A DNA stretch of 64,000 nucleotides from Ylistrum balloti (taxonomy: Eukaryota): contig NW_026782535.1 of NCBI RefSeq assembly GCF_031769215.1, positions 1 through 64,000 of the forward strand, read 5' to 3'. The translations under genes were made by a program, and so were the position numbers. Numbering within the stretch: position 1 is the stretch's first letter; the number at the start of each line of letters is the position of its first letter. The notes beneath the pieces are model-generated. The model was not told where the DNA came from. It saw only the letters and a program-made list of their open reading frames with translations, and did not search any database. Positions 13,269 through 20,388 of the stretch are shown piece after piece.

Positions 13269-16200
13269 TCAGTTTCGTTTAGCCAGCAGAGAAGGCTTGA
13301 TCTGATCAGGGGTCAACCCTCGTACACTGTACAGTCTCTCGGCACGTTGCTGTAGTGTCCCCCCACATTTCATTCCTCTGGCCATCAACTCCTTCTTCAA
13401 CTTGTCCAGACTTAAAGCCTCAAGCTCCTGAACAGATGAAATACTGTCAAGATCCAATGGTTCGTCCTGCAAAGCAGAAATAAAGGCAGGTCACTTAAAC
13501 AGAAAGTATCAGAAAGTTTAAATACCATCTCTAGATCAGCAACCATAAAAAATCACCATCTTCAAAACACTCTTTTCAAATGTACTTCATTTTTCTTGTT
13601 ATGAACAGACTTTTTCATCCACTGTTTACTGCATAAAGGGAGATAACTCAGGCATTTTGCAAACAAACCTACTTAATCAGAAAAATAAGAAATGAAACAT
13701 TTTCCCTCCAATAAAGTTTGTCAGTCATGATTGAGAAAATATATGGAACATCTTTTAATAATAAGATTTTACACCTCCTTTTCCATACATATAAATTTCA
13801 TATTTCTTGATTGAAATTAAAAGAAAAATATGTGTGTATCACAAATATCAATTTTGATAAAATTCAAAGATTTAGCATTCTCACTTGCTCTGATTCCTTC
13901 TCCTGCTGCAATGCTTCTTTGTGTTTTGGTGGAACTTCCCCTAATGCTTTTAGCAGGCTGTTTTTACTGCTACTTGAATTACTGTCTTTTACTGTGTCAG
14001 TCTTTCCGGTGTTTGAATCCTCTGAATTCTTGTTTGTGTCATTTTCTGTACAGTTAAAATCACTTTCAGGTGAGTGCTTTATAGCATCTGTTTCCTGTTC
14101 ACCATTGTCTTTACATTGTGTATCACTGTTGTTTGATCTGGAATCTTGGGACACCTTTCTTGACATTGTACAAGACATATCATCTCCATCTGGATCACTA
14201 TCACTCAGATCTTCCATGTCAATACCAAGCCTGAAAAATAGTCACTAGTTTTACCAAAATTCTGTAAGGTGCTATAGAAGTGTTTTACATAAATACTCTG
14301 ATTTTCTCTCTATGAAATGTTCTGTTGTAAAATCTATGATCAGTTTAATATCCACTTTCAAAGGACTAATTCATGTAAAAGAAAAAAATATATTAACCCT
14401 CCAAACACTGCTTTAAAGAAAACTTTGGTTTGAATATTCATTTCGAAAGATTTAGTTCTTACTTTCCATGCAATGCTTTGTTCCATTCTTTCTAACCATT
14501 TACCTATAAGACAAGTAATTAAACTGCTCAATTACTACAATGACTTACAAAAGGATCATTTAAACATATGAATATGCATGATTAAATATGCATGAGGTGT
14601 GGAAATTTGTAATGTTTGTCTTTCTAAATGTATATGAAATGTCTATGACATTTCTATACATCAAACCTACCACTCTGTGGCTTTTTTCACTTTAGCCGAT
14701 TTGTGTGGATGTGATTCTGCCGTCCTTTTCCGACACCCAGAGGAACTGGAGGAAACTGGGGCTGCTCCAAGACTGTGTGATGGACCTGACAAAGTTTGTG
14801 CCTTTTGCAACCCTGTTAAATAAATTGTAACGTTAAAAAAAAAAAAAACAAAATAAAAAACAAAATAAAAACAAAAAACAACAGGGAATGCTGGAAATGG
14901 TTGACCATGTACACAGATTATATAAATCGCAAAAGTCCTTTTTAATCACACAACAAAACAGACAGAATTACAGTACGTATTCATCTTTCACTGAGATTGA
15001 AATGAAAGGAATAGATATGAAGAATGGAAATGGAAACCATGACACAACACATGCTTCAACAAATCTTCCTGACAAAAATATGTGTTGTCAAAATCATCCT
15101 CAATACTCCAGGTGTTGTGCTCTCTCACCCCTGGAACATTTAATGGCAAAATTGAAGTTTCCATACATATCAAATAAATTTTGTGGCCAAATAACAGTAT
15201 GATGTAGTGGCTTTGAAGTTGTGTGTCACTCCTTTGTAATCTTCAAAGATATGAATCAGGCTGTGATTGGTCAGTTTTTCTTTACTGAAACTCACTCTAG
15301 ACCAATCAAATTACTTCTCTTGTGCATTCAACTTCGTGGTGAAATGTTTCAGGGGTGCAGAGTGTGATAGTGAGTGTGACCTCAGAGGTAATGAAAATGT
15401 ATCAACATATAATATAATTCCAATGACTTAAAATACATCAGAACCACTGTTAACATGTATTCTGTTTTCTCAATTATCACAATTTCACCAAAAACGACTA
15501 AAGTTTTACCTTTTTGCAGAGCATTCTCTAAATTTTCAGCAACCAGATTTTTTTGTTGATCGTACTGTGGATCATCAAATTTATGATTCGGCATAGCTCG
15601 TCTTTTGGCCAGTCTCTCCTGTCTTTTTTCTTCCTCTTCCTTCTCCTTTTGAGCTTTCTTTCCAATCCATTCCTTTAACCTTAGATCAAGAAAATCATAA
15701 AAACACTGTACCAATATGAGTATTTTAATTAACTATATGTGATATTGTTTGTGAAGTTCAAAACATGATTTAAAAACATTATGGTTCAGAAACTTCTGTT
15801 ACATATATTGAGAACTGCAAATATTTTCAATACCAAGTGATGCAATCAACTAGATCACATGAGCTTCTTCATCACATGATTTCATAAGTATACACATGAA
15901 TTGTACAAAATCATATATCACCAAAGAGACATGTTACATATCAGTGTGATACAATTCATTTCTGCCAGTTTTTGTCAGTGATTTTTTCCCTTACTGTTTT
16001 TCGTTATTAACATCTCTCATACGCCTTCCACTCAAGTCTCGACATGCTTCGTGGTTGGTGGTTTTCTCAATCTGGGCTCCAATGGCACGCAGCATGGAAC
16101 CAAACCCTGTGAAAAGATAAATTTAATAATACACATCTTTACATCAGTTATAATGATATAATACAGGGCTCTCACATCCCATTTTGGGACTGGGGCCTGG

Positions 16201-17349
16201 GGCCCTTAGAATTGGGAAAAATAATGGTGTTTTCCTTAGAATTGGGAAAACTTGGGGTCTAAATTGGGTAAAAAAGATACTATTTTGCATTGGGATTCGG
16301 CCCCAAATCTGGCAGATTGAGAGCCCTGAAATATTCTAAATTAGATTTAAAAGAATACTTAAAATTCTGATAAAAATTAAGCAAAATCATTCACTAAAAA
16401 TCTTTTATCAGATAAAACTTTAAAAATCTAGTTTTATGATGAGAAATAAATATGGCACAACATATTGTATCTAAGTTCACATAACTGGTAGACCACTTCC
16501 ATTTACTCAAAATAAAAAGTTTTAAACCATGTTTCCAGTCTAGCATTTTAACATTCTCAGTGATATATACTGTAGCTGTGTGATATAGAATACCTCCTTT
16601 GCCCCCCAGTAGCCTTGGGATGACATGGTACACTCTACCAGATTGTAGAATATCATCAAAATGGATCACTTTTCCATTACTTGTCAAATAAACATCATCT
16701 TCTGGAAAGTCCTGAAAACAAATGTGTATATTGTTAATTATTTCTGATATTATTGTTCAATAAAATAACGTACATGTGTGAGTTAAGCATGGAAAATTGG
16801 CAACAGTCTTCACATATATGTATCTAGCTAAACATTTCATCAGCAAGATATACATAACTCAAAAAAAACTACGAGAAGGAATAAAATGTGTCACCAAAAT
16901 CATGAAACATATCCCGAATCAGAGAACATTCAATGCTGTACTACTGAGATATTTATCGTGTCACTGAACAGCCTGCAGGGTTCGCTTTCTTGGATTGGTG
17001 GACACGTGTGCGACATATTTTGATACTAAAATCGACTGGGGTGAGCAATCCTGTTATTCATTACAGATATACTCAGTGTAGACGTGATAACCTAGTCGGT
17101 AAATCTGCTCATTATAGATATGTATATTGATGTGACATGCTAAACAAGTAGCTTCAGCTAAGCATCGGTACCTGCGCTCAGCTACTCTATCAGAATTTAC
17201 ACCAAATAAGATATTTAAATTACCGGTTTAGAAGAACAGAACGATTTAGATAAATTACGAAACGTAATGTTTCCATCCTGGACAAGGAAATAAGTACAGT
17301 TATTCCCAAATAAATGATCTATGATACAAATATTGCTGTTCATTTTCAT
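13269..17349 (-). CDS. SDE2: SDE2 (ubiquitin-fold-activated splicing/replication-stress regulator)
   Basis: Seven exons in consistent phase: 17224-17349, 16594-16711 (...[10 protein letters not shown]), 15995-16106 ([37 protein letters not shown]), 15510-15679, 14671-14812, 13885-14230 (acidic linker) and 13269-13466 ([38 protein letters not shown]-terminal SAP-like domain). The [12 protein letters not shown] signature is diagnostic. Confidence 0.95.
15103..15391. mobile_element. ~290-bp MITE with degenerate inverted termini in an SDE2 intron (same family as 11319 and 31003)
   Basis: The left end ATACTCCAGGTGTTGTGCTCTCTCACCCCTGGAACATTT is inverted relative to the right end AAATGTTTCAGGGGTGCAGAGTGTG.... 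The internal CTAGACCAATCAAATTACTTC is shared with 30985-31006. Confidence 0.55.
16164..16328. mobile_element. hAT-like MITE in an SDE2 intron
   Basis: It has an 11-bp perfect TIR CAGGGCTCTCA...TGAGAGCCCTG and a GC-richer interior. The 8-bp flanks ATATAATA and AAATATTC match only 5/8, so the TSD is degenerate. Confidence 0.6.
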
Positions 17350-17895
17350 TCAGAAGTCGTCGATTTCGAAAACAGGATATAAAACATTTGTTGTAACAAG
17401 CAAGTAGGACACGGGACCAGTGATCCGGATCTTAAAGCAGTCGTCCATGATTTGTTGAAGAAAACGCTCATTTGAGTATCTTATGTACTTAATCAATTAT
17501 TTTGTACGGATTTTCAGACCTAAAAAGGCTTACTTCCCAACTATTTGGGCATAGATATTGAATTTTTTCCGGGAGAAAATCTTAAAAAGAAGTAAATTAC
17601 CAATAACAGCAACAGAGAGCACGATAAGATGAACCAAAATGTAATTTTTACAACAATGAAGCAATGTCTTAGTCAGTCAGTAATTTCAAATTTCTTTCAA
17701 AACTGGTCAGGATTTTTTTTTTTTTTTTTTCGGTCTGGTCCGGAATGATTTTTTTATTTTAAGTTTTTCTGTTTATTTTCCCTCCCGGCATGCATTGCGG
17801 TATAGTGAACGTTCCGGGAAATTATGAAGAGGCAGGAGGTGATACGCATTCCACTGCAGCATCGGTAGCACATACATTCCGATTGAACTTTTAAC
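17350..17895. promoter_or_regulatory. Probable shared (bidirectional) promoter/5' UTR region between SDE2 and the ADAM gene
   Basis: The divergent start codons are only 546 bp apart. This is inferred from geometry; no TSS data are available. Confidence 0.45.
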
Positions 17896-20388
17896 ATGTT
17901 TTCATATCTTCTCATCTTCACTGTATCATTAGCGTTTATAAATGATATATCAAATGTCGATTGCTTTCATAACGAGTACAAATCTAACTCCGCATTTTTG
18001 TGGAAACAAACTGTTTCTCATGGAAAGGAAATGAACAATGAGAGAACAGACGAGAATATTCGAGCTTTCGTAAAAGACTACAAAACTGTTGTGCTGAATA
18101 TTTCAGACCACAAGCCATCGTCAACTAAAACGGACCATACTTATGCCGATAAGATAATCAGATTCACTGCATACGAGAAGAATTTTACTTTGATTCTGAA
18201 TCGAGACAGAAGTGTCTTGTCGCCTGTTTTGACTGTAACTATGGGAGGGTCGGTGTGGTTTGGCAGTCAGCTCTCAGCTATGGGAATAGCTTCAGTGTTA
18301 TCTGGGAGAGTCGAGGGAGTAAAAAGCTCGTACGTATTTGGAAAAATACACGGAGGGTCATTTGACGGTATTGTACAGATTGAAGGCGAAGTGTTTTATA
18401 TAGAACCTATGTCTAAGTATATCTCGGATATCCTGATAGAAAACAGTTCTTATGAAATATGTATCATTTATAAGAAAGTGGATTTGGTGGACCAAAAAGA
18501 TTCTGTTCAATTTAAACAAAAGAAACATTGTCAAACTATGAACAGCACAGAAATTCAAGCGCCGAGGGTTTTGACCAGTGCTCGAAACAAAAGTTCCAGA
18601 GCAAAACGATCAGCGATTTTCTCGTATTCATGTTCACTCCATGTAGTCGTTGATCATACATTCTTTATCAACGTGGGCCAGTCCTCGCGTTTTCAAACTA
18701 TCGCTGAAATACTGTACCTTGTGGGAAGTGCAGATCATATTTTCAGAAGTACTGACTTTGACGGAGATAGTAAAGGCGACAATGTGGGTTTTACTATCAC
18801 AGCAATCACAATATACACTAACGAAACGGAGAAAGATTACAGAATGGCTGAAAACACTGACGTCTATGAATACCTCAACCAATTTTCTAAATATAATTTC
18901 GACGATTTCTGCCTCGGCGTAGCGTTCACGTTCCGCGACTTTGAAGACGGAATTGTTGGCCTCGCGTGGATTGGAAATTCTGATGTCTTTGGACCTCCTG
19001 GTGGAATATGTCAGACACGAATTAGTTTGTCTGGGGAAATATTCAACTTTAATACAGCTCTTGTAACCATGTTAAGTTACGGAAGTAGAGTACCGAGCTA
19101 CCGAGCAGCCCTGACGCTAGCGCATGAATTTGGACATAGTTTCGGTAGCAATCATGACGATGCGACGAACTTGATTTGTGCACCAGGGAACCAGATGGGG
19201 AACTATATAATGTATCCTTATGCAGCTGATGGTTCCAAACCAAATAACAATCAGTTTTCAAGTTGTAGTTTAAGTCAAATCTATCCGGTCATTGTAAACA
19301 AGGGTACCTGTCTGCGAACTGAAGTTGGACCAGTTTGTGGCAACGGTATGGTAGAGGCAGGGGAAGAGTGTGATTGCGGCAGTTCCAGAATATGTGCTTT
19401 CTATAGTGATTTGTGCTGCGTCCCTTCTGATGTCACAAATGAAGTCGATAGGCCGTGCACTTTGCGGAGAGATCAGGGTAGAATTTGCTCTTGGACACTC
19501 TCTCCATGTTGCAATAAGAATTGCACCTATATTCCAGCAGCTAAAAGGCACAAATGTTCTGAGGCATCTCAGTGTAAAGAAGAGTCGTTCTGCGATGGAA
19601 CCAGCGAAGATTGTCCCGACGTGTCGTTTTCACTAGATGGCGCTACCTGTGACGATGGAAAGAAAACGTGCAAGGATGGTTCATGTGTTAGAAGTATATG
19701 CGAGTCGAGAGGCATGTTCGCATGTCATTGTACTGAAGATGACGAAAGCATGTGTATGCTGTGTTGTCGTTCCAACAACTCTACAAAATGCCATCCCGCA
19801 CATAATTTTGGTCTTCTAGGGACTTCCGGTGAGATCCTTTTCAAAGATGCTGGTGAAACATGCTACAGCAATACCGGCGTTTGTAACAAAGATCACCAAT
19901 GTATCCTTAATAACCCTAACGATGTCATAAAACGACTTGGAAAAATGTTTAACGATGATAGTTTAGAGGATATCAAAACTTGGTTAACAAATTACTGGTA
20001 TTACATTGTGATTTCTGTAGTAGGTCTCGCTATTTTGGTCATGATTTCCATTTTGACGAAGAAGAAACTTGATAATACTCATATCGACGCTTATCGTATG
20101 GGTAGATTATTGCGAGTCACCGAACAAGCCAACATGGAGAAAGAGCGACAGAAACGACAATTTGAGGAACTTGAGGAAAAATTTAATGAGAAAATACGGA
20201 AGGTTAAGGAATGTGTTGTTCAGCGAGAGTTTACCGAGGCCGTGTCTAGACTTGTAAACTTATTCCCAACGGCGGAAACCGGAACTATAGCTGATATATG
20301 CCGGAAGTGTACTTCGGAAGATGTAGCCGTCAGACTCCTCCTCATGAAGGGTTATCCAATCAGACGAATGGTTGCATCTCACCAATGA
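17896..20388 (+). CDS. ADAM10: Intronless ADAM10-like disintegrin metalloprotease (830 aa) with an atypical cytoplasmic tail
   Basis: A single ORF encodes a signal peptide, an ADAM10-like prodomain (GSFDGIVQIEGEVFYIEP), a furin site RAKR, DDFCLGVAFTFRDFEDGIVGLAWIG, the zinc motif HEFGHSFGSNHD, the Met-turn GNYIMYPYA, a disintegrin domain (CGNGMVEAGEECDCG), a Cys-rich/membrane-proximal CMLCC and a TM helix WYYIVISVVGLAILVMISIL. Orthology versus paralogy is not established. Confidence 0.93.
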   Translation: MFSYLLIFTVSLAFINDISNVDCFHNEYKSNSAFLWKQTVSHGKEMNNERTDENIRAFVKDYKTVVLNISDHKPSSTKTDHTYADKIIRFTAYEKNFTLILNRDRSVLSPVLTVTMGGSVWFGSQLSAMGIASVLSGRVEGVKSSYVFGKIHGGSFDGIVQIEGEVFYIEPMSKYISDILIENSSYEICIIYKKVDLVDQKDSVQFKQKKHCQTMNSTEIQAPRVLTSARNKSSRAKRSAIFSYSCSLHVVVDHTFFINVGQSSRFQTIAEILYLVGSADHIFRSTDFDGDSKGDNVGFTITAITIYTNETEKDYRMAENTDVYEYLNQFSKYNFDDFCLGVAFTFRDFEDGIVGLAWIGNSDVFGPPGGICQTRISLSGEIFNFNTALVTMLSYGSRVPSYRAALTLAHEFGHSFGSNHDDATNLICAPGNQMGNYIMYPYAADGSKPNNNQFSSCSLSQIYPVIVNKGTCLRTEVGPVCGNGMVEAGEECDCGSSRICAFYSDLCCVPSDVTNEVDRPCTLRRDQGRICSWTLSPCCNKNCTYIPAAKRHKCSEASQCKEESFCDGTSEDCPDVSFSLDGATCDDGKKTCKDGSCVRSICESRGMFACHCTEDDESMCMLCCRSNNSTKCHPAHNFGLLGTSGEILFKDAGETCYSNTGVCNKDHQCILNNPNDVIKRLGKMFNDDSLEDIKTWLTNYWYYIVISVVGLAILVMISILTKKKLDNTHIDAYRMGRLLRVTEQANMEKERQKRQFEELEEKFNEKIRKVKECVVQREFTEAVSRLVNLFPTAETGTIADICRKCTSEDVAVRLLLMKGYPIRRMVASHQ

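What the first reader, a model, noticed from the sequence alone, without database searches (positions are those of the whole stretch)
20056..20388. ADAM10-like sheddase whose cytoplasmic tail is a coiled coil plus a CUE-like ubiquitin-binding motif
Seen: after the TM helix the tail reads ...RLLRVTEQANMEKERQKRQFEELEEKFNEKIRKVKE (charged, helical) and then EAVSRLVNLFPTAETGTIADICRKCTSEDVAVRLLLMKG (~20236-20352). Known: CUE domains (e.g. Vps9, TOLLIP) are ~40-aa three-helix bundles with an (M/L)FP motif and a downstream di-leucine. Canonical ADAM10 tails are Pro-rich SH3 ligands with no folded domain. Inference: this intact protease (HExxHxxGxxHD, Met-turn, furin site) may be recruited to, or trafficked by, ubiquitinated membrane proteins. 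I do not know this ADAM-CUE architecture from any described protein, but I cannot search for it.
Basis: partly seen in the sequence, partly recalled or inferred. Interest (0 to 1): 0.8.

Follow-up and report, generated by a model that had tools for sequence, protein, structure and literature searches.

The report
ADAM10-like sheddase with CUE-like tail
A scallop membrane protease of the ADAM10 family carries, at the end of its cytoplasmic tail, a small three-helix domain of the CUE (ubiquitin-binding) type. The same unannotated combination turns up in other molluscs, a scorpion and choanoflagellates, so it is an old and apparently undescribed way of wiring a sheddase.

Summary
Window 17896..20388 (+) is one uninterrupted 830-aa ORF for an intact ADAM10-family metalloprotease, identical to a Ylistrum balloti "ADAM10-like" protein apart from that model's start and C-terminal end.

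After the membrane helix, AlphaFold2 predicts one long helix (pLDDT 88). It runs straight into a three-helix bundle at residues 776-826.

- **Fold:** Foldseek, VIA-align and the ESM Atlas all place this bundle nearest to CUE domains (SMARCAD1 CUE1 Z 8.1; Tollip, Vps9, gp78), then UBA domains.
- **Sequence link:** The window sequence gives no Pfam hit. A profile of the module finds 137 protein clusters, including a genuine WW+CUE protein (hhalign 94.5%). 19 of 149 family members touch Pfam CUE, one above threshold.
- **Conserved motifs:** The [L/F]-F-P loop and the L-L pair in helix 3 are near-invariant.
- **Selection:** dN/dS of the module is 0.08, as low as in the catalytic domain.
- **Distribution:** The architecture occurs in bivalves, gastropods, a scorpion and seven choanoflagellate species. 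It is absent from the canonical scallop ADAM10 and from human ADAM10 and ADAM17.

Ubiquitin binding is inferred, not shown. The "coiled coil" is only weakly supported. I found no paper describing this architecture.

The parts
17896..20388 (+). Complete intronless ORF (830 aa plus stop) of an ADAM10-family type-I membrane metalloprotease
   Evidence: Best solved relative is human ADAM10 (270 bits), then ADAM17 (211 bits).
17896..17964 (+). Hydrophobic N-terminus (residues 1-23), probable signal peptide. The public Ylistrum model starts at M48 and lacks it.
   Evidence: Reading it as a signal peptide is inference from the sequence.
18598..18609 (+). RAKR (residues 235-238), a proprotein-convertase-type site at the prodomain/catalytic boundary
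   Evidence: R235, K237 (R in Mizuhopecten) and R238 are kept in five pectinid sequences.
18628..19290 (+). M12B catalytic domain (residues about 245-465), with the zinc motif HEFGHSFGSNHD at 19123-19158
   Evidence: Reprolysin_2 6e-29, Reprolysin_5 2e-28
19354..19965 (+). Disintegrin plus ADAM10-type cysteine-rich region (residues about 487-690)
   Evidence: Disintegrin, 32.9 bits, below the curated cutoff of 35.1. PF21299 is recorded for the Mizuhopecten orthologue..
19993..20055 (+). Transmembrane helix (residues about 700-720, YWYYIVISVVGLAILVMISIL)
20059..20220 (+). Cytoplasmic helical linker of fixed length (residues 722-775). It has a conserved juxtamembrane motif (H729, A732, Y733, R734, G736, R737, L738) and a charged amphipathic stretch with a short heptad seam (752, 756, 759, 763, 767, 770).
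   Evidence: dN/dS 0.10-0.13.
20221..20373 (+). CUE-like three-helix bundle (residues 776-826). Helix 1 is the end of the long helix, helix 2 is about 795-804, and helix 3 about 808-817.
   Evidence: dN/dS 0.075-0.087.
20260..20268 (+). L789-F790-P791, the counterpart of the CUE Met-Phe-Pro loop between helices 1 and 2
   Evidence: FP aligns with the FP of Tollip CUE and of the WW+CUE protein P0185.
20335..20343 (+). L814-L815-L816 in helix 3, the counterpart of the CUE di-leucine
20350..20370 (+). Family-specific C-terminal extension G-[YF]-P-[ML]-[RK]-x-hydrophobic (residues 819-825), not part of canonical CUE
   Evidence: pLDDT is lower here.
29194..29265 (+). Possible alternative last exon (CAKDTLVNSSDKTIKNCRYCRAK plus stop), joined to V826 in the public Ylistrum balloti gene model. 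It does not touch the CUE-like domain.

Best explanation
The gene encodes an intact paralogue of ADAM10, a type-I membrane sheddase, from an old lineage distinct from canonical ADAM10/Kuzbanian. In the AF2 model its membrane helix continues as one rigid cytoplasmic helix about 55 residues long and of conserved length (predicted). That helix ends as helix 1 of a divergent CUE-type three-helix bundle (shown at the level of predicted fold and remote homology). The bundle keeps the two motifs that CUE domains use to grip the Ile44 patch of ubiquitin: the [M/L/F]-F-P loop and the L-L pair in helix 3. The most likely working model (inferred) is that the domain binds mono-ubiquitin, or short chains, about 8 nm below the membrane. 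That would couple the protease to ubiquitin-marked membrane proteins or sorting adaptors. Alternatively it would promote the protease's own ubiquitination and endosomal sorting, as described for other CUE proteins. The amphipathic linker may also pair two protease molecules (weakly supported).
For: The protease is intact and ADAM10-like. AF2 of the module gives pLDDT 85 with three helices and FP in the loop. AF2 of the membrane helix plus tail gives pLDDT 88 with one helix over residues 689-789. In Foldseek PDB, 12 of the first 13 rows are CUE domains, top probability 0.99, rmsd 0.8 A. An unbiased VIA scan of 48,161 chains puts SMARCAD1 CUE1 in the top three (Z 8.1, 7.1, 6.9), followed by many UBA and CUE domains including Cue2-Ub at Z 5.5. 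ESM Atlas neighbours are clusters carrying PF02845 (WW-CUE, VPS9-CUE, AMFR, Smr-CUE). The module profile finds a WW+CUE protein (Pfam CUE 30.7 bits, above GA 21.1) at E 7e-5 among 1.84 billion proteins; hhalign gives 94.5%, E 8e-8. 19 of 149 family members hit Pfam CUE, against at most 7 for any other family. One fragment whose parent protein is unknown passes the threshold (23.0 bits). An ADAM10 homologue with an MFP loop reaches 20.2 bits over CUE positions 5-41 of 42. The best PDB sequence match of the family profile is Tollip CUE, with FP on FP and LL on LL. F790, P791, L815 and L816 are near-invariant. dN/dS is 0.08. The role of Met-Phe-Pro in contacting the L8/I44/V70 patch, and the weak binding of Cue1 with Leu-Ala-Pro, are stated in PMC7432864.
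Against: The window sequence itself gives no Pfam CUE hit, even at E 10. PDB sequence hits are above E 0.05. Small three-helix bundles give middling Z-scores easily (note). The Met of MFP is Leu or Phe in 142 of 149 members. The nearest structure, SMARCAD1 CUE1, is solved bound to KAP1, not to ubiquitin. The family has its own invariant residues (R785, E808, the GYPMR extension) that canonical CUE lacks, which may indicate a different partner. No binding, expression or localisation data could be obtained.
Confidence: 0.5

Rival explanations
1. The domain has the CUE/UBA-like fold but binds something other than ubiquitin. Candidates are a specific cytosolic adaptor, a kinase or E3, a trafficking coat or a cytoskeletal protein. 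It would then serve as a family-specific docking or regulatory module for the protease.
For: The top structural match, SMARCAD1 CUE1, is solved in complex with KAP1. Other close folds (NXF/TAP UBA, HBS1-like, the EF-Ts N-terminal domain) bind non-ubiquitin ligands. Family-specific invariant residues R785 and E808, and the conserved G-Y-P-M-R extension, are not CUE hallmarks. The Met of MFP is replaced in most members.
Against: Both ubiquitin-contact motifs (FP and LL) are the most conserved hydrophobic surface features of the family. The sequence-level neighbours are ubiquitin-binding CUEs such as Tollip.
Confidence: 0.35
2. The tail acts mainly as a structural or dimerising stalk. The long helix forms a coiled coil that pairs two protease molecules, and the terminal bundle only caps or stabilises it, or acts as an autoinhibitory clamp like the UBA-like AID of AMPK.
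For: The linker is continuous, of fixed length and almost gapless across molluscs, and AF2 predicts a single helix. There is a heptad seam over 749-772. One member gave a weak hit to the AMPK AID family.
Against: The heptad pattern is not significant over the whole linker. The bundle, not the linker, is the most conserved part. In choanoflagellates and in P0181 the linker differs while the bundle is kept.
Confidence: 0.1
3. There is no real domain: LFP and LL are chance motifs in a helical, charged tail.
For: No significant Pfam or PDB sequence hit for the window sequence alone.
Against: 137 clusters share the module at E <= 1e-3 and 33 at <= 1e-10. Positions are near-invariant across 149 sequences, dN/dS is 0.08, and the fold is confidently predicted.
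Confidence: 0.02

Closest known systems
CUE domains (Pfam PF02845; e.g. Tollip, Vps9, Cue2, gp78/AMFR, SMARCAD1 CUE1)
   Same: About 45-residue three-helix bundle. It has a hydrophobic-Phe-Pro loop after helix 1 and a Leu-Leu pair in helix 3. It gives the best fold matches and the best remote sequence matches.
   Different: Most members, this one included, fall below the Pfam threshold. Met is usually Leu or Phe. There are extra invariant Arg (helix 1) and Glu (start of helix 3) residues and a conserved G-Y-P-M-R tail. Helix 1 is the end of a roughly 100-residue helix that begins in the membrane.
Membrane-anchored CUE proteins of ERAD (Cue1p, gp78/AMFR, AUP1)
   Same: A CUE-type domain held close to a membrane by a transmembrane segment of the same polypeptide (own knowledge; PMC7432864 for Cue1 and gp78 CUE).
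   Different: Those are ER proteins that assist E2/E3 enzymes. Here the carrier is a secretory-pathway, cell-surface-type protease with a luminal/extracellular catalytic domain. No G2BR, U7BR or RING element was detected.
Canonical ADAM10 / Kuzbanian
   Same: Same ectodomain plan and closest solved relative: prodomain, M12B catalytic domain with HExxHxxGxxHD, disintegrin, ADAM10-type Cys-rich region and a single membrane helix.
   Different: Canonical tails are short and Pro-rich, as in scallop P0044. Human ADAM10 and ADAM17 chains are not matched by the module profile. In a quick tree the CUE-tail proteins fall on one side of a split (SH-aLRT 97) from canonical ADAM10 of scallop, Daphnia, springtail and tick. 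The gene is intronless in three scallops.
ADAM17 / TACE
   Same: Same ADAM10/17 subfamily. Full-length match of 211 bits.
   Different: Less similar than ADAM10. The full-length human ADAM17 chain is not hit by the module profile.

Membership tests
ADAM10/17 subfamily of M12B metalloproteases | M12B catalytic domain with the zinc motif HExxHxxGxxHD and a following Met-turn | tested here: met
   Reprolysin_2 and Reprolysin_5 at E about 1e-29. HEFGHSFGSNHD at residues 410-421 and I-M-Y at 438-440, read. Invariant in pectinid orthologues.
ADAM10/17 subfamily of M12B metalloproteases | Disintegrin-like plus ADAM10-type cysteine-rich region, a single membrane helix, and closest similarity to ADAM10 or ADAM17 | tested here: met
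   Disintegrin at E 1e-7 but 32.9 bits, below the curated cutoff of 35.1. PF21299 is recorded for orthologues. Human ADAM10 270 bits over residues 240-717 and ADAM17 211 bits.
ADAM10/17 subfamily of M12B metalloproteases | Orthology to canonical ADAM10 (Kuzbanian) | tested here: not met
   The quick ML tree separates it from canonical ADAM10 of Mizuhopecten, Daphnia, Orchesella and a tick (SH-aLRT 97). The careful tree was not finished and no ADAM17 outgroup was included.
CUE domain (PF02845, UBA-like clan) | Scores above Pfam's gathering threshold (21.1 bits) | tested here: not met
   The window module gives no hit at E <= 10. Within the family, 19 of 149 hit at E <= 1. One 68-aa fragment of unknown parent protein reaches 23.0 bits, and the ADAM10 homologue P0181 reaches 20.2 bits.
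CUE domain (PF02845, UBA-like clan) | Compact three-helix bundle of about 40-45 residues | tested here: met
   AF2 pLDDT 85, helices at module residues 2-19, 25-34 and 38-47. CUE domains top Foldseek, VIA and the Atlas. This is a prediction, not an experimental structure.
CUE domain (PF02845, UBA-like clan) | Met-Phe-Pro motif at the end of helix 1 | tested here: inconclusive
   Phe-Pro is near-invariant (148 and 149 of 149). The first position is Phe 73, Leu 69 and Met only 3. FP aligns with the FP of Tollip and P0185.
CUE domain (PF02845, UBA-like clan) | Conserved di-leucine in helix 3 | tested here: met
   L815 133/149 and L816 129/149. They align with the LL of Tollip CUE.
CUE domain (PF02845, UBA-like clan) | Detectable homology to bona fide CUE domains | tested here: met
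   The profile finds the WW+CUE protein P0185 at E 7e-5 among 1.84 billion proteins. hhalign gives 94.5%, E 8e-8, over 37 columns.
CUE domain (PF02845, UBA-like clan) | Binds the Ile44 patch of ubiquitin | not testable with these tools
   Needs a binding experiment.
Coiled coil | Extended heptad a/d hydrophobic repeat | tested here: inconclusive
   Over residues 749-772, a/d positions hold 57% of the conserved hydrophobicity (56 of 5000 shuffles reach it). Over 729-790 there is no excess. AF2 run as a monomer shows one long helix.

The most novel reading that the evidence does not exclude
A pre-metazoan lineage of ADAM10-type sheddases, present in choanoflagellates, molluscs and chelicerates and absent from the human ADAM10 and ADAM17 chains tested, reads ubiquitin directly through a built-in membrane-tethered CUE domain. 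Ectodomain shedding and ubiquitin-dependent sorting of membrane proteins would then have been physically coupled before animals arose.
Probability: 0.35. Interest if true: 0.75.

Novelty: new variant of a known kind. Interest (0 to 1): 0.62.

Why it matters
ADAM10 and ADAM17 control Notch, growth-factor and adhesion signalling. How they are steered to substrates and removed from the surface is understood mainly through partner proteins (TspanC8 tetraspanins, iRhoms) and short linear motifs in disordered tails.

A folded ubiquitin-receptor-type domain built into the tail of an ancient ADAM10 sister lineage would be a different regulatory logic. Its presence in choanoflagellates would place that logic at or before the origin of animals.

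The idea is directly testable with a roughly 60-residue recombinant domain. The family signature found here, A-x-x-R-L-x-x-[FL]-F-P-T...E-E-x-A-V-x-x-L-L-x-x-G-[YF]-P-[ML], could be turned into a new profile. That profile would annotate more than a hundred proteins currently labelled only 'ADAM10-like' or 'hypothetical'.

Tried and rejected
- **Single-sequence searches:** Pfam and PDB searches with the tail alone gave only chance-level hits such as PRTRC_E and mtRF1-like.
- **ESM Atlas by features:** the search on residues 770-830 gave no usable hit.
- **Expression evidence:** the only public run holding the stretch behaves like a DNA run, and its contigs leave the ORF uncovered, possibly because of the tool's filter. 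Nothing can be said about transcription or about the proposed 3' splice.
- **Extra copies:** there is none in the window.
- **Taxonomy of unnamed hits:** look-ups of P0036, P0039, P0040, P0055 and others returned no names.
- **Tree:** the careful maximum-likelihood tree did not finish in the time allowed, so only the quick tree is reported.
- **Heptad test:** the test over the whole linker was negative.
- **Literature:** four searches for ADAM plus CUE, ADAM10-like in molluscs, and ADAMs of choanoflagellates found no description of this architecture. This is a limited library, so it does not prove absence.
- **Earlier notes of this scan:** they held only the same first-reader note.
- **Chance-motif reading:** rejected on conservation.
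Full report
**1. What is there**

Window 17896..20388 (+) is a single open reading frame of 830 codons.
- Pfam finds the M12B catalytic domain (Reprolysin_2 6e-29, Reprolysin_5 2e-28) and a disintegrin domain, the latter just below its curated cutoff.
- The zinc motif HEFGHSFGSNHD (residues 410-421), the I-M-Y Met-turn, the RAKR convertase-type site (235-238) and a hydrophobic N-terminus are all present.
- The closest solved proteins are human ADAM10 (270 bits) and then ADAM17 (211 bits).
- The protein is identical to a Ylistrum balloti 'ADAM10-like' entry apart from that model's start and last exon. The window is therefore scallop DNA.

**2. The tail is conserved, and far beyond scallops**

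- Among five pectinid sequences, nearly every residue from the membrane helix to about residue 826 is invariant.
- A word search on residues 240-830 returned 55 ADAM10-like proteins. 35 of them carry the same C-terminal module. They include Pecten, Mizuhopecten, Saccostrea, Mytilus, Haliotis, Aplysia, Biomphalaria and five Gigantopelta paralogues.
- Between the membrane helix and the Phe-Pro motif the alignment is almost gapless, so the linker length is fixed.
- An exhaustive HMMER search with the 35-sequence profile found 137 clusters (50%-identity representatives) at E <= 1e-3 and 33 at <= 1e-10.
- 63 of the 122 new hits have a recognisable ADAM ectodomain. Most of the rest are short C-terminal fragments.
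- Named members include seven choanoflagellate species (Monosiga brevicollis XP_001750336.1, Salpingoeca urceolata, S. infusionum, S. macrocollata, Barroeca, Didymoeca, Helgoeca). They also include the scorpion Centruroides and the whelk Nucella.
- All ten full-length members I scanned are M12B proteases.
- Across 149 aligned modules, P791 is invariant and F790, E808, R785, V812, L815, L816 and G819 are near-invariant.

**3. Selection**

The Pecten maximus and Mizuhopecten orthologues are also single-exon. They sit head-to-head with SDE2, as in the window.

| Region | dN/dS (codon alignments, dS about 0.7-1.0) |
|---|---|
| CUE-like module | 0.075-0.087 |
| Linker | 0.10-0.13 |
| Catalytic domain | 0.085-0.13 |
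| Prodomain | 0.2-0.33 |

The module is as constrained as the active site.

**4. Fold**

- AlphaFold2 on the module alignment gives pLDDT 85 and three helices, with Phe-Pro in the first loop.
- On the membrane helix plus tail it gives pLDDT 88. A single uninterrupted helix runs from the membrane segment to residue 789 and doubles as helix 1 of the bundle.
- In Foldseek against the PDB, 12 of the first 13 rows are CUE domains: SMARCAD1 CUE1, Tollip, gp78, Vps9, CUEDC1 and two RIKEN CUE structures. UBA domains follow. E-values are weak, as expected for 45 residues, but the top probability is 0.99 with rmsd 0.8 A.
- A Foldseek-independent scan of 48,161 chains puts SMARCAD1 CUE1 first (Z 8.1, 7.1, 6.9). 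Most of the next rows are UBA-like domains.
- ESM Atlas neighbours are clusters annotated with PF02845: WW-CUE, VPS9-CUE, AMFR and Smr-CUE.

**5. Sequence link to CUE**

- The window module alone does not hit Pfam.
- The family profile reaches a WW+CUE protein (P0185, Pfam CUE 30.7 bits against a threshold of 21.1) at E 7e-5 in the 1.84-billion-protein library.
- hhalign of the profile against that CUE region gives 94.5% probability, E 8e-8, with FP on FP.
- Of 149 members scanned singly, 19 hit CUE at E <= 1. The next families reach 7 (GP68), then 3 (UBA, DMA, FBPase_C); UBA and DMA belong to the same clan as CUE.
- One 68-aa fragment of unknown parent protein passes the threshold (23.0 bits). 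An ADAM10 homologue with a true M-F-P loop (P0181) reaches 20.2 bits over CUE positions 5-41 of 42.
- The best PDB sequence match of the wide profile is Tollip CUE, with FP on FP and LL on LL, at E 0.076.
- I conclude that this is a divergent branch of the CUE family. It is CUE-like rather than a member by Pfam's cut-off.

**6. Function**

- CUE domains contact the L8/I44/V70 patch of ubiquitin with the Met-Phe-Pro stretch. Cue1, with Leu-Ala-Pro, binds weakly (PMC7432864).
- Here Phe-Pro and Leu-Leu are kept, and the Met position is Leu or Phe.
- This makes ubiquitin binding the most economical reading. I put it at about one in two.
- The nearest structure is a CUE solved in complex with KAP1. 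The family also has its own invariant Arg, Glu and G-Y-P-M-R extension, so a non-ubiquitin partner is a serious rival (about one in three).
- The 'coiled coil' is an amphipathic helix. A heptad seam is significant only over three heptads, so dimerisation remains an open inference.

**7. Relation to known ADAMs**

- Scallops also have a canonical ADAM10 with a short Pro-rich tail (P0044).
- In a quick tree, that protein and arthropod ADAM10s fall on the other side of a split (SH-aLRT 97) from the CUE-tail proteins.
- Human ADAM10 and full-length ADAM17 chains in the PDB are not matched by the module profile.
- I found no paper describing an ADAM with a CUE or UBA-like tail.

**8. Verdict**

- The structural interpretation is supported.
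- The functional interpretation is plausible but untested.
- The architecture is not a scallop oddity. It is an ancient, widespread and unannotated variant of two known kinds: an ADAM10-family protease and a CUE-type domain.

Noticed in passing
window 20371-20388 and 29194-29265: The public Ylistrum balloti model joins V826 to a 23-codon exon 8.8 kb downstream (CAKDTLVNSS...). The junction looks like GTT|GC...AG|TGT, an unusual GC-AG intron. Oyster orthologues read ...MVCAKDFMIS in one ORF, so the spliced end may be the authentic one. The read-through ORF ends ...MVASHQ.
   Followed up: partly
window about 15590-17420 (- strand): Exons of an SDE2-like gene lie head-to-head with the ADAM gene, about 0.5 kb between the starts. 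The same arrangement is seen in Pecten maximus (L003) and Mizuhopecten (L004). SDE2 itself carries a ubiquitin-like domain (own knowledge), which is probably a coincidence.
   Followed up: partly
window 17896-20388; L003 3001-5463; L004 3001-5451; L001 6001-7797; L002 177-2570: Members of this ADAM lineage are encoded by single uninterrupted ORFs in three scallops and on two unnamed metagenome contigs. Animal ADAM10 genes are normally multi-exon (own knowledge).
   Followed up: partly
P0122 (Salpingoeca urceolata, 1407 aa), residues 872-929 and 1008-1275: In this choanoflagellate transcript model the CUE-like module is followed by an Exo_endo_phos2 domain (E 2e-56), the family that includes inositol 5-phosphatases (own knowledge). 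If this is not an assembly fusion, it links the tail to phosphoinositide and endocytic chemistry.
   Followed up: no
P0095, P0105, P0106 (Nucella), P0130, P0136, P0142: A subgroup has the module followed by 300-650 further residues with no Pfam match. Some of these models lack the catalytic domain.
   Followed up: no
window 16200-16400: A short stretch recruits hundreds of contigs at very high depth in the one public run laid on it. It is probably a dispersed repeat.
   Followed up: no
L001 2071-4089: Exo_endo_phos_2 and RVT_1 ORFs, the remnant of a LINE-type retroelement, lie just upstream of the intronless ADAM10-like gene on an unnamed metagenome contig.
   Followed up: no
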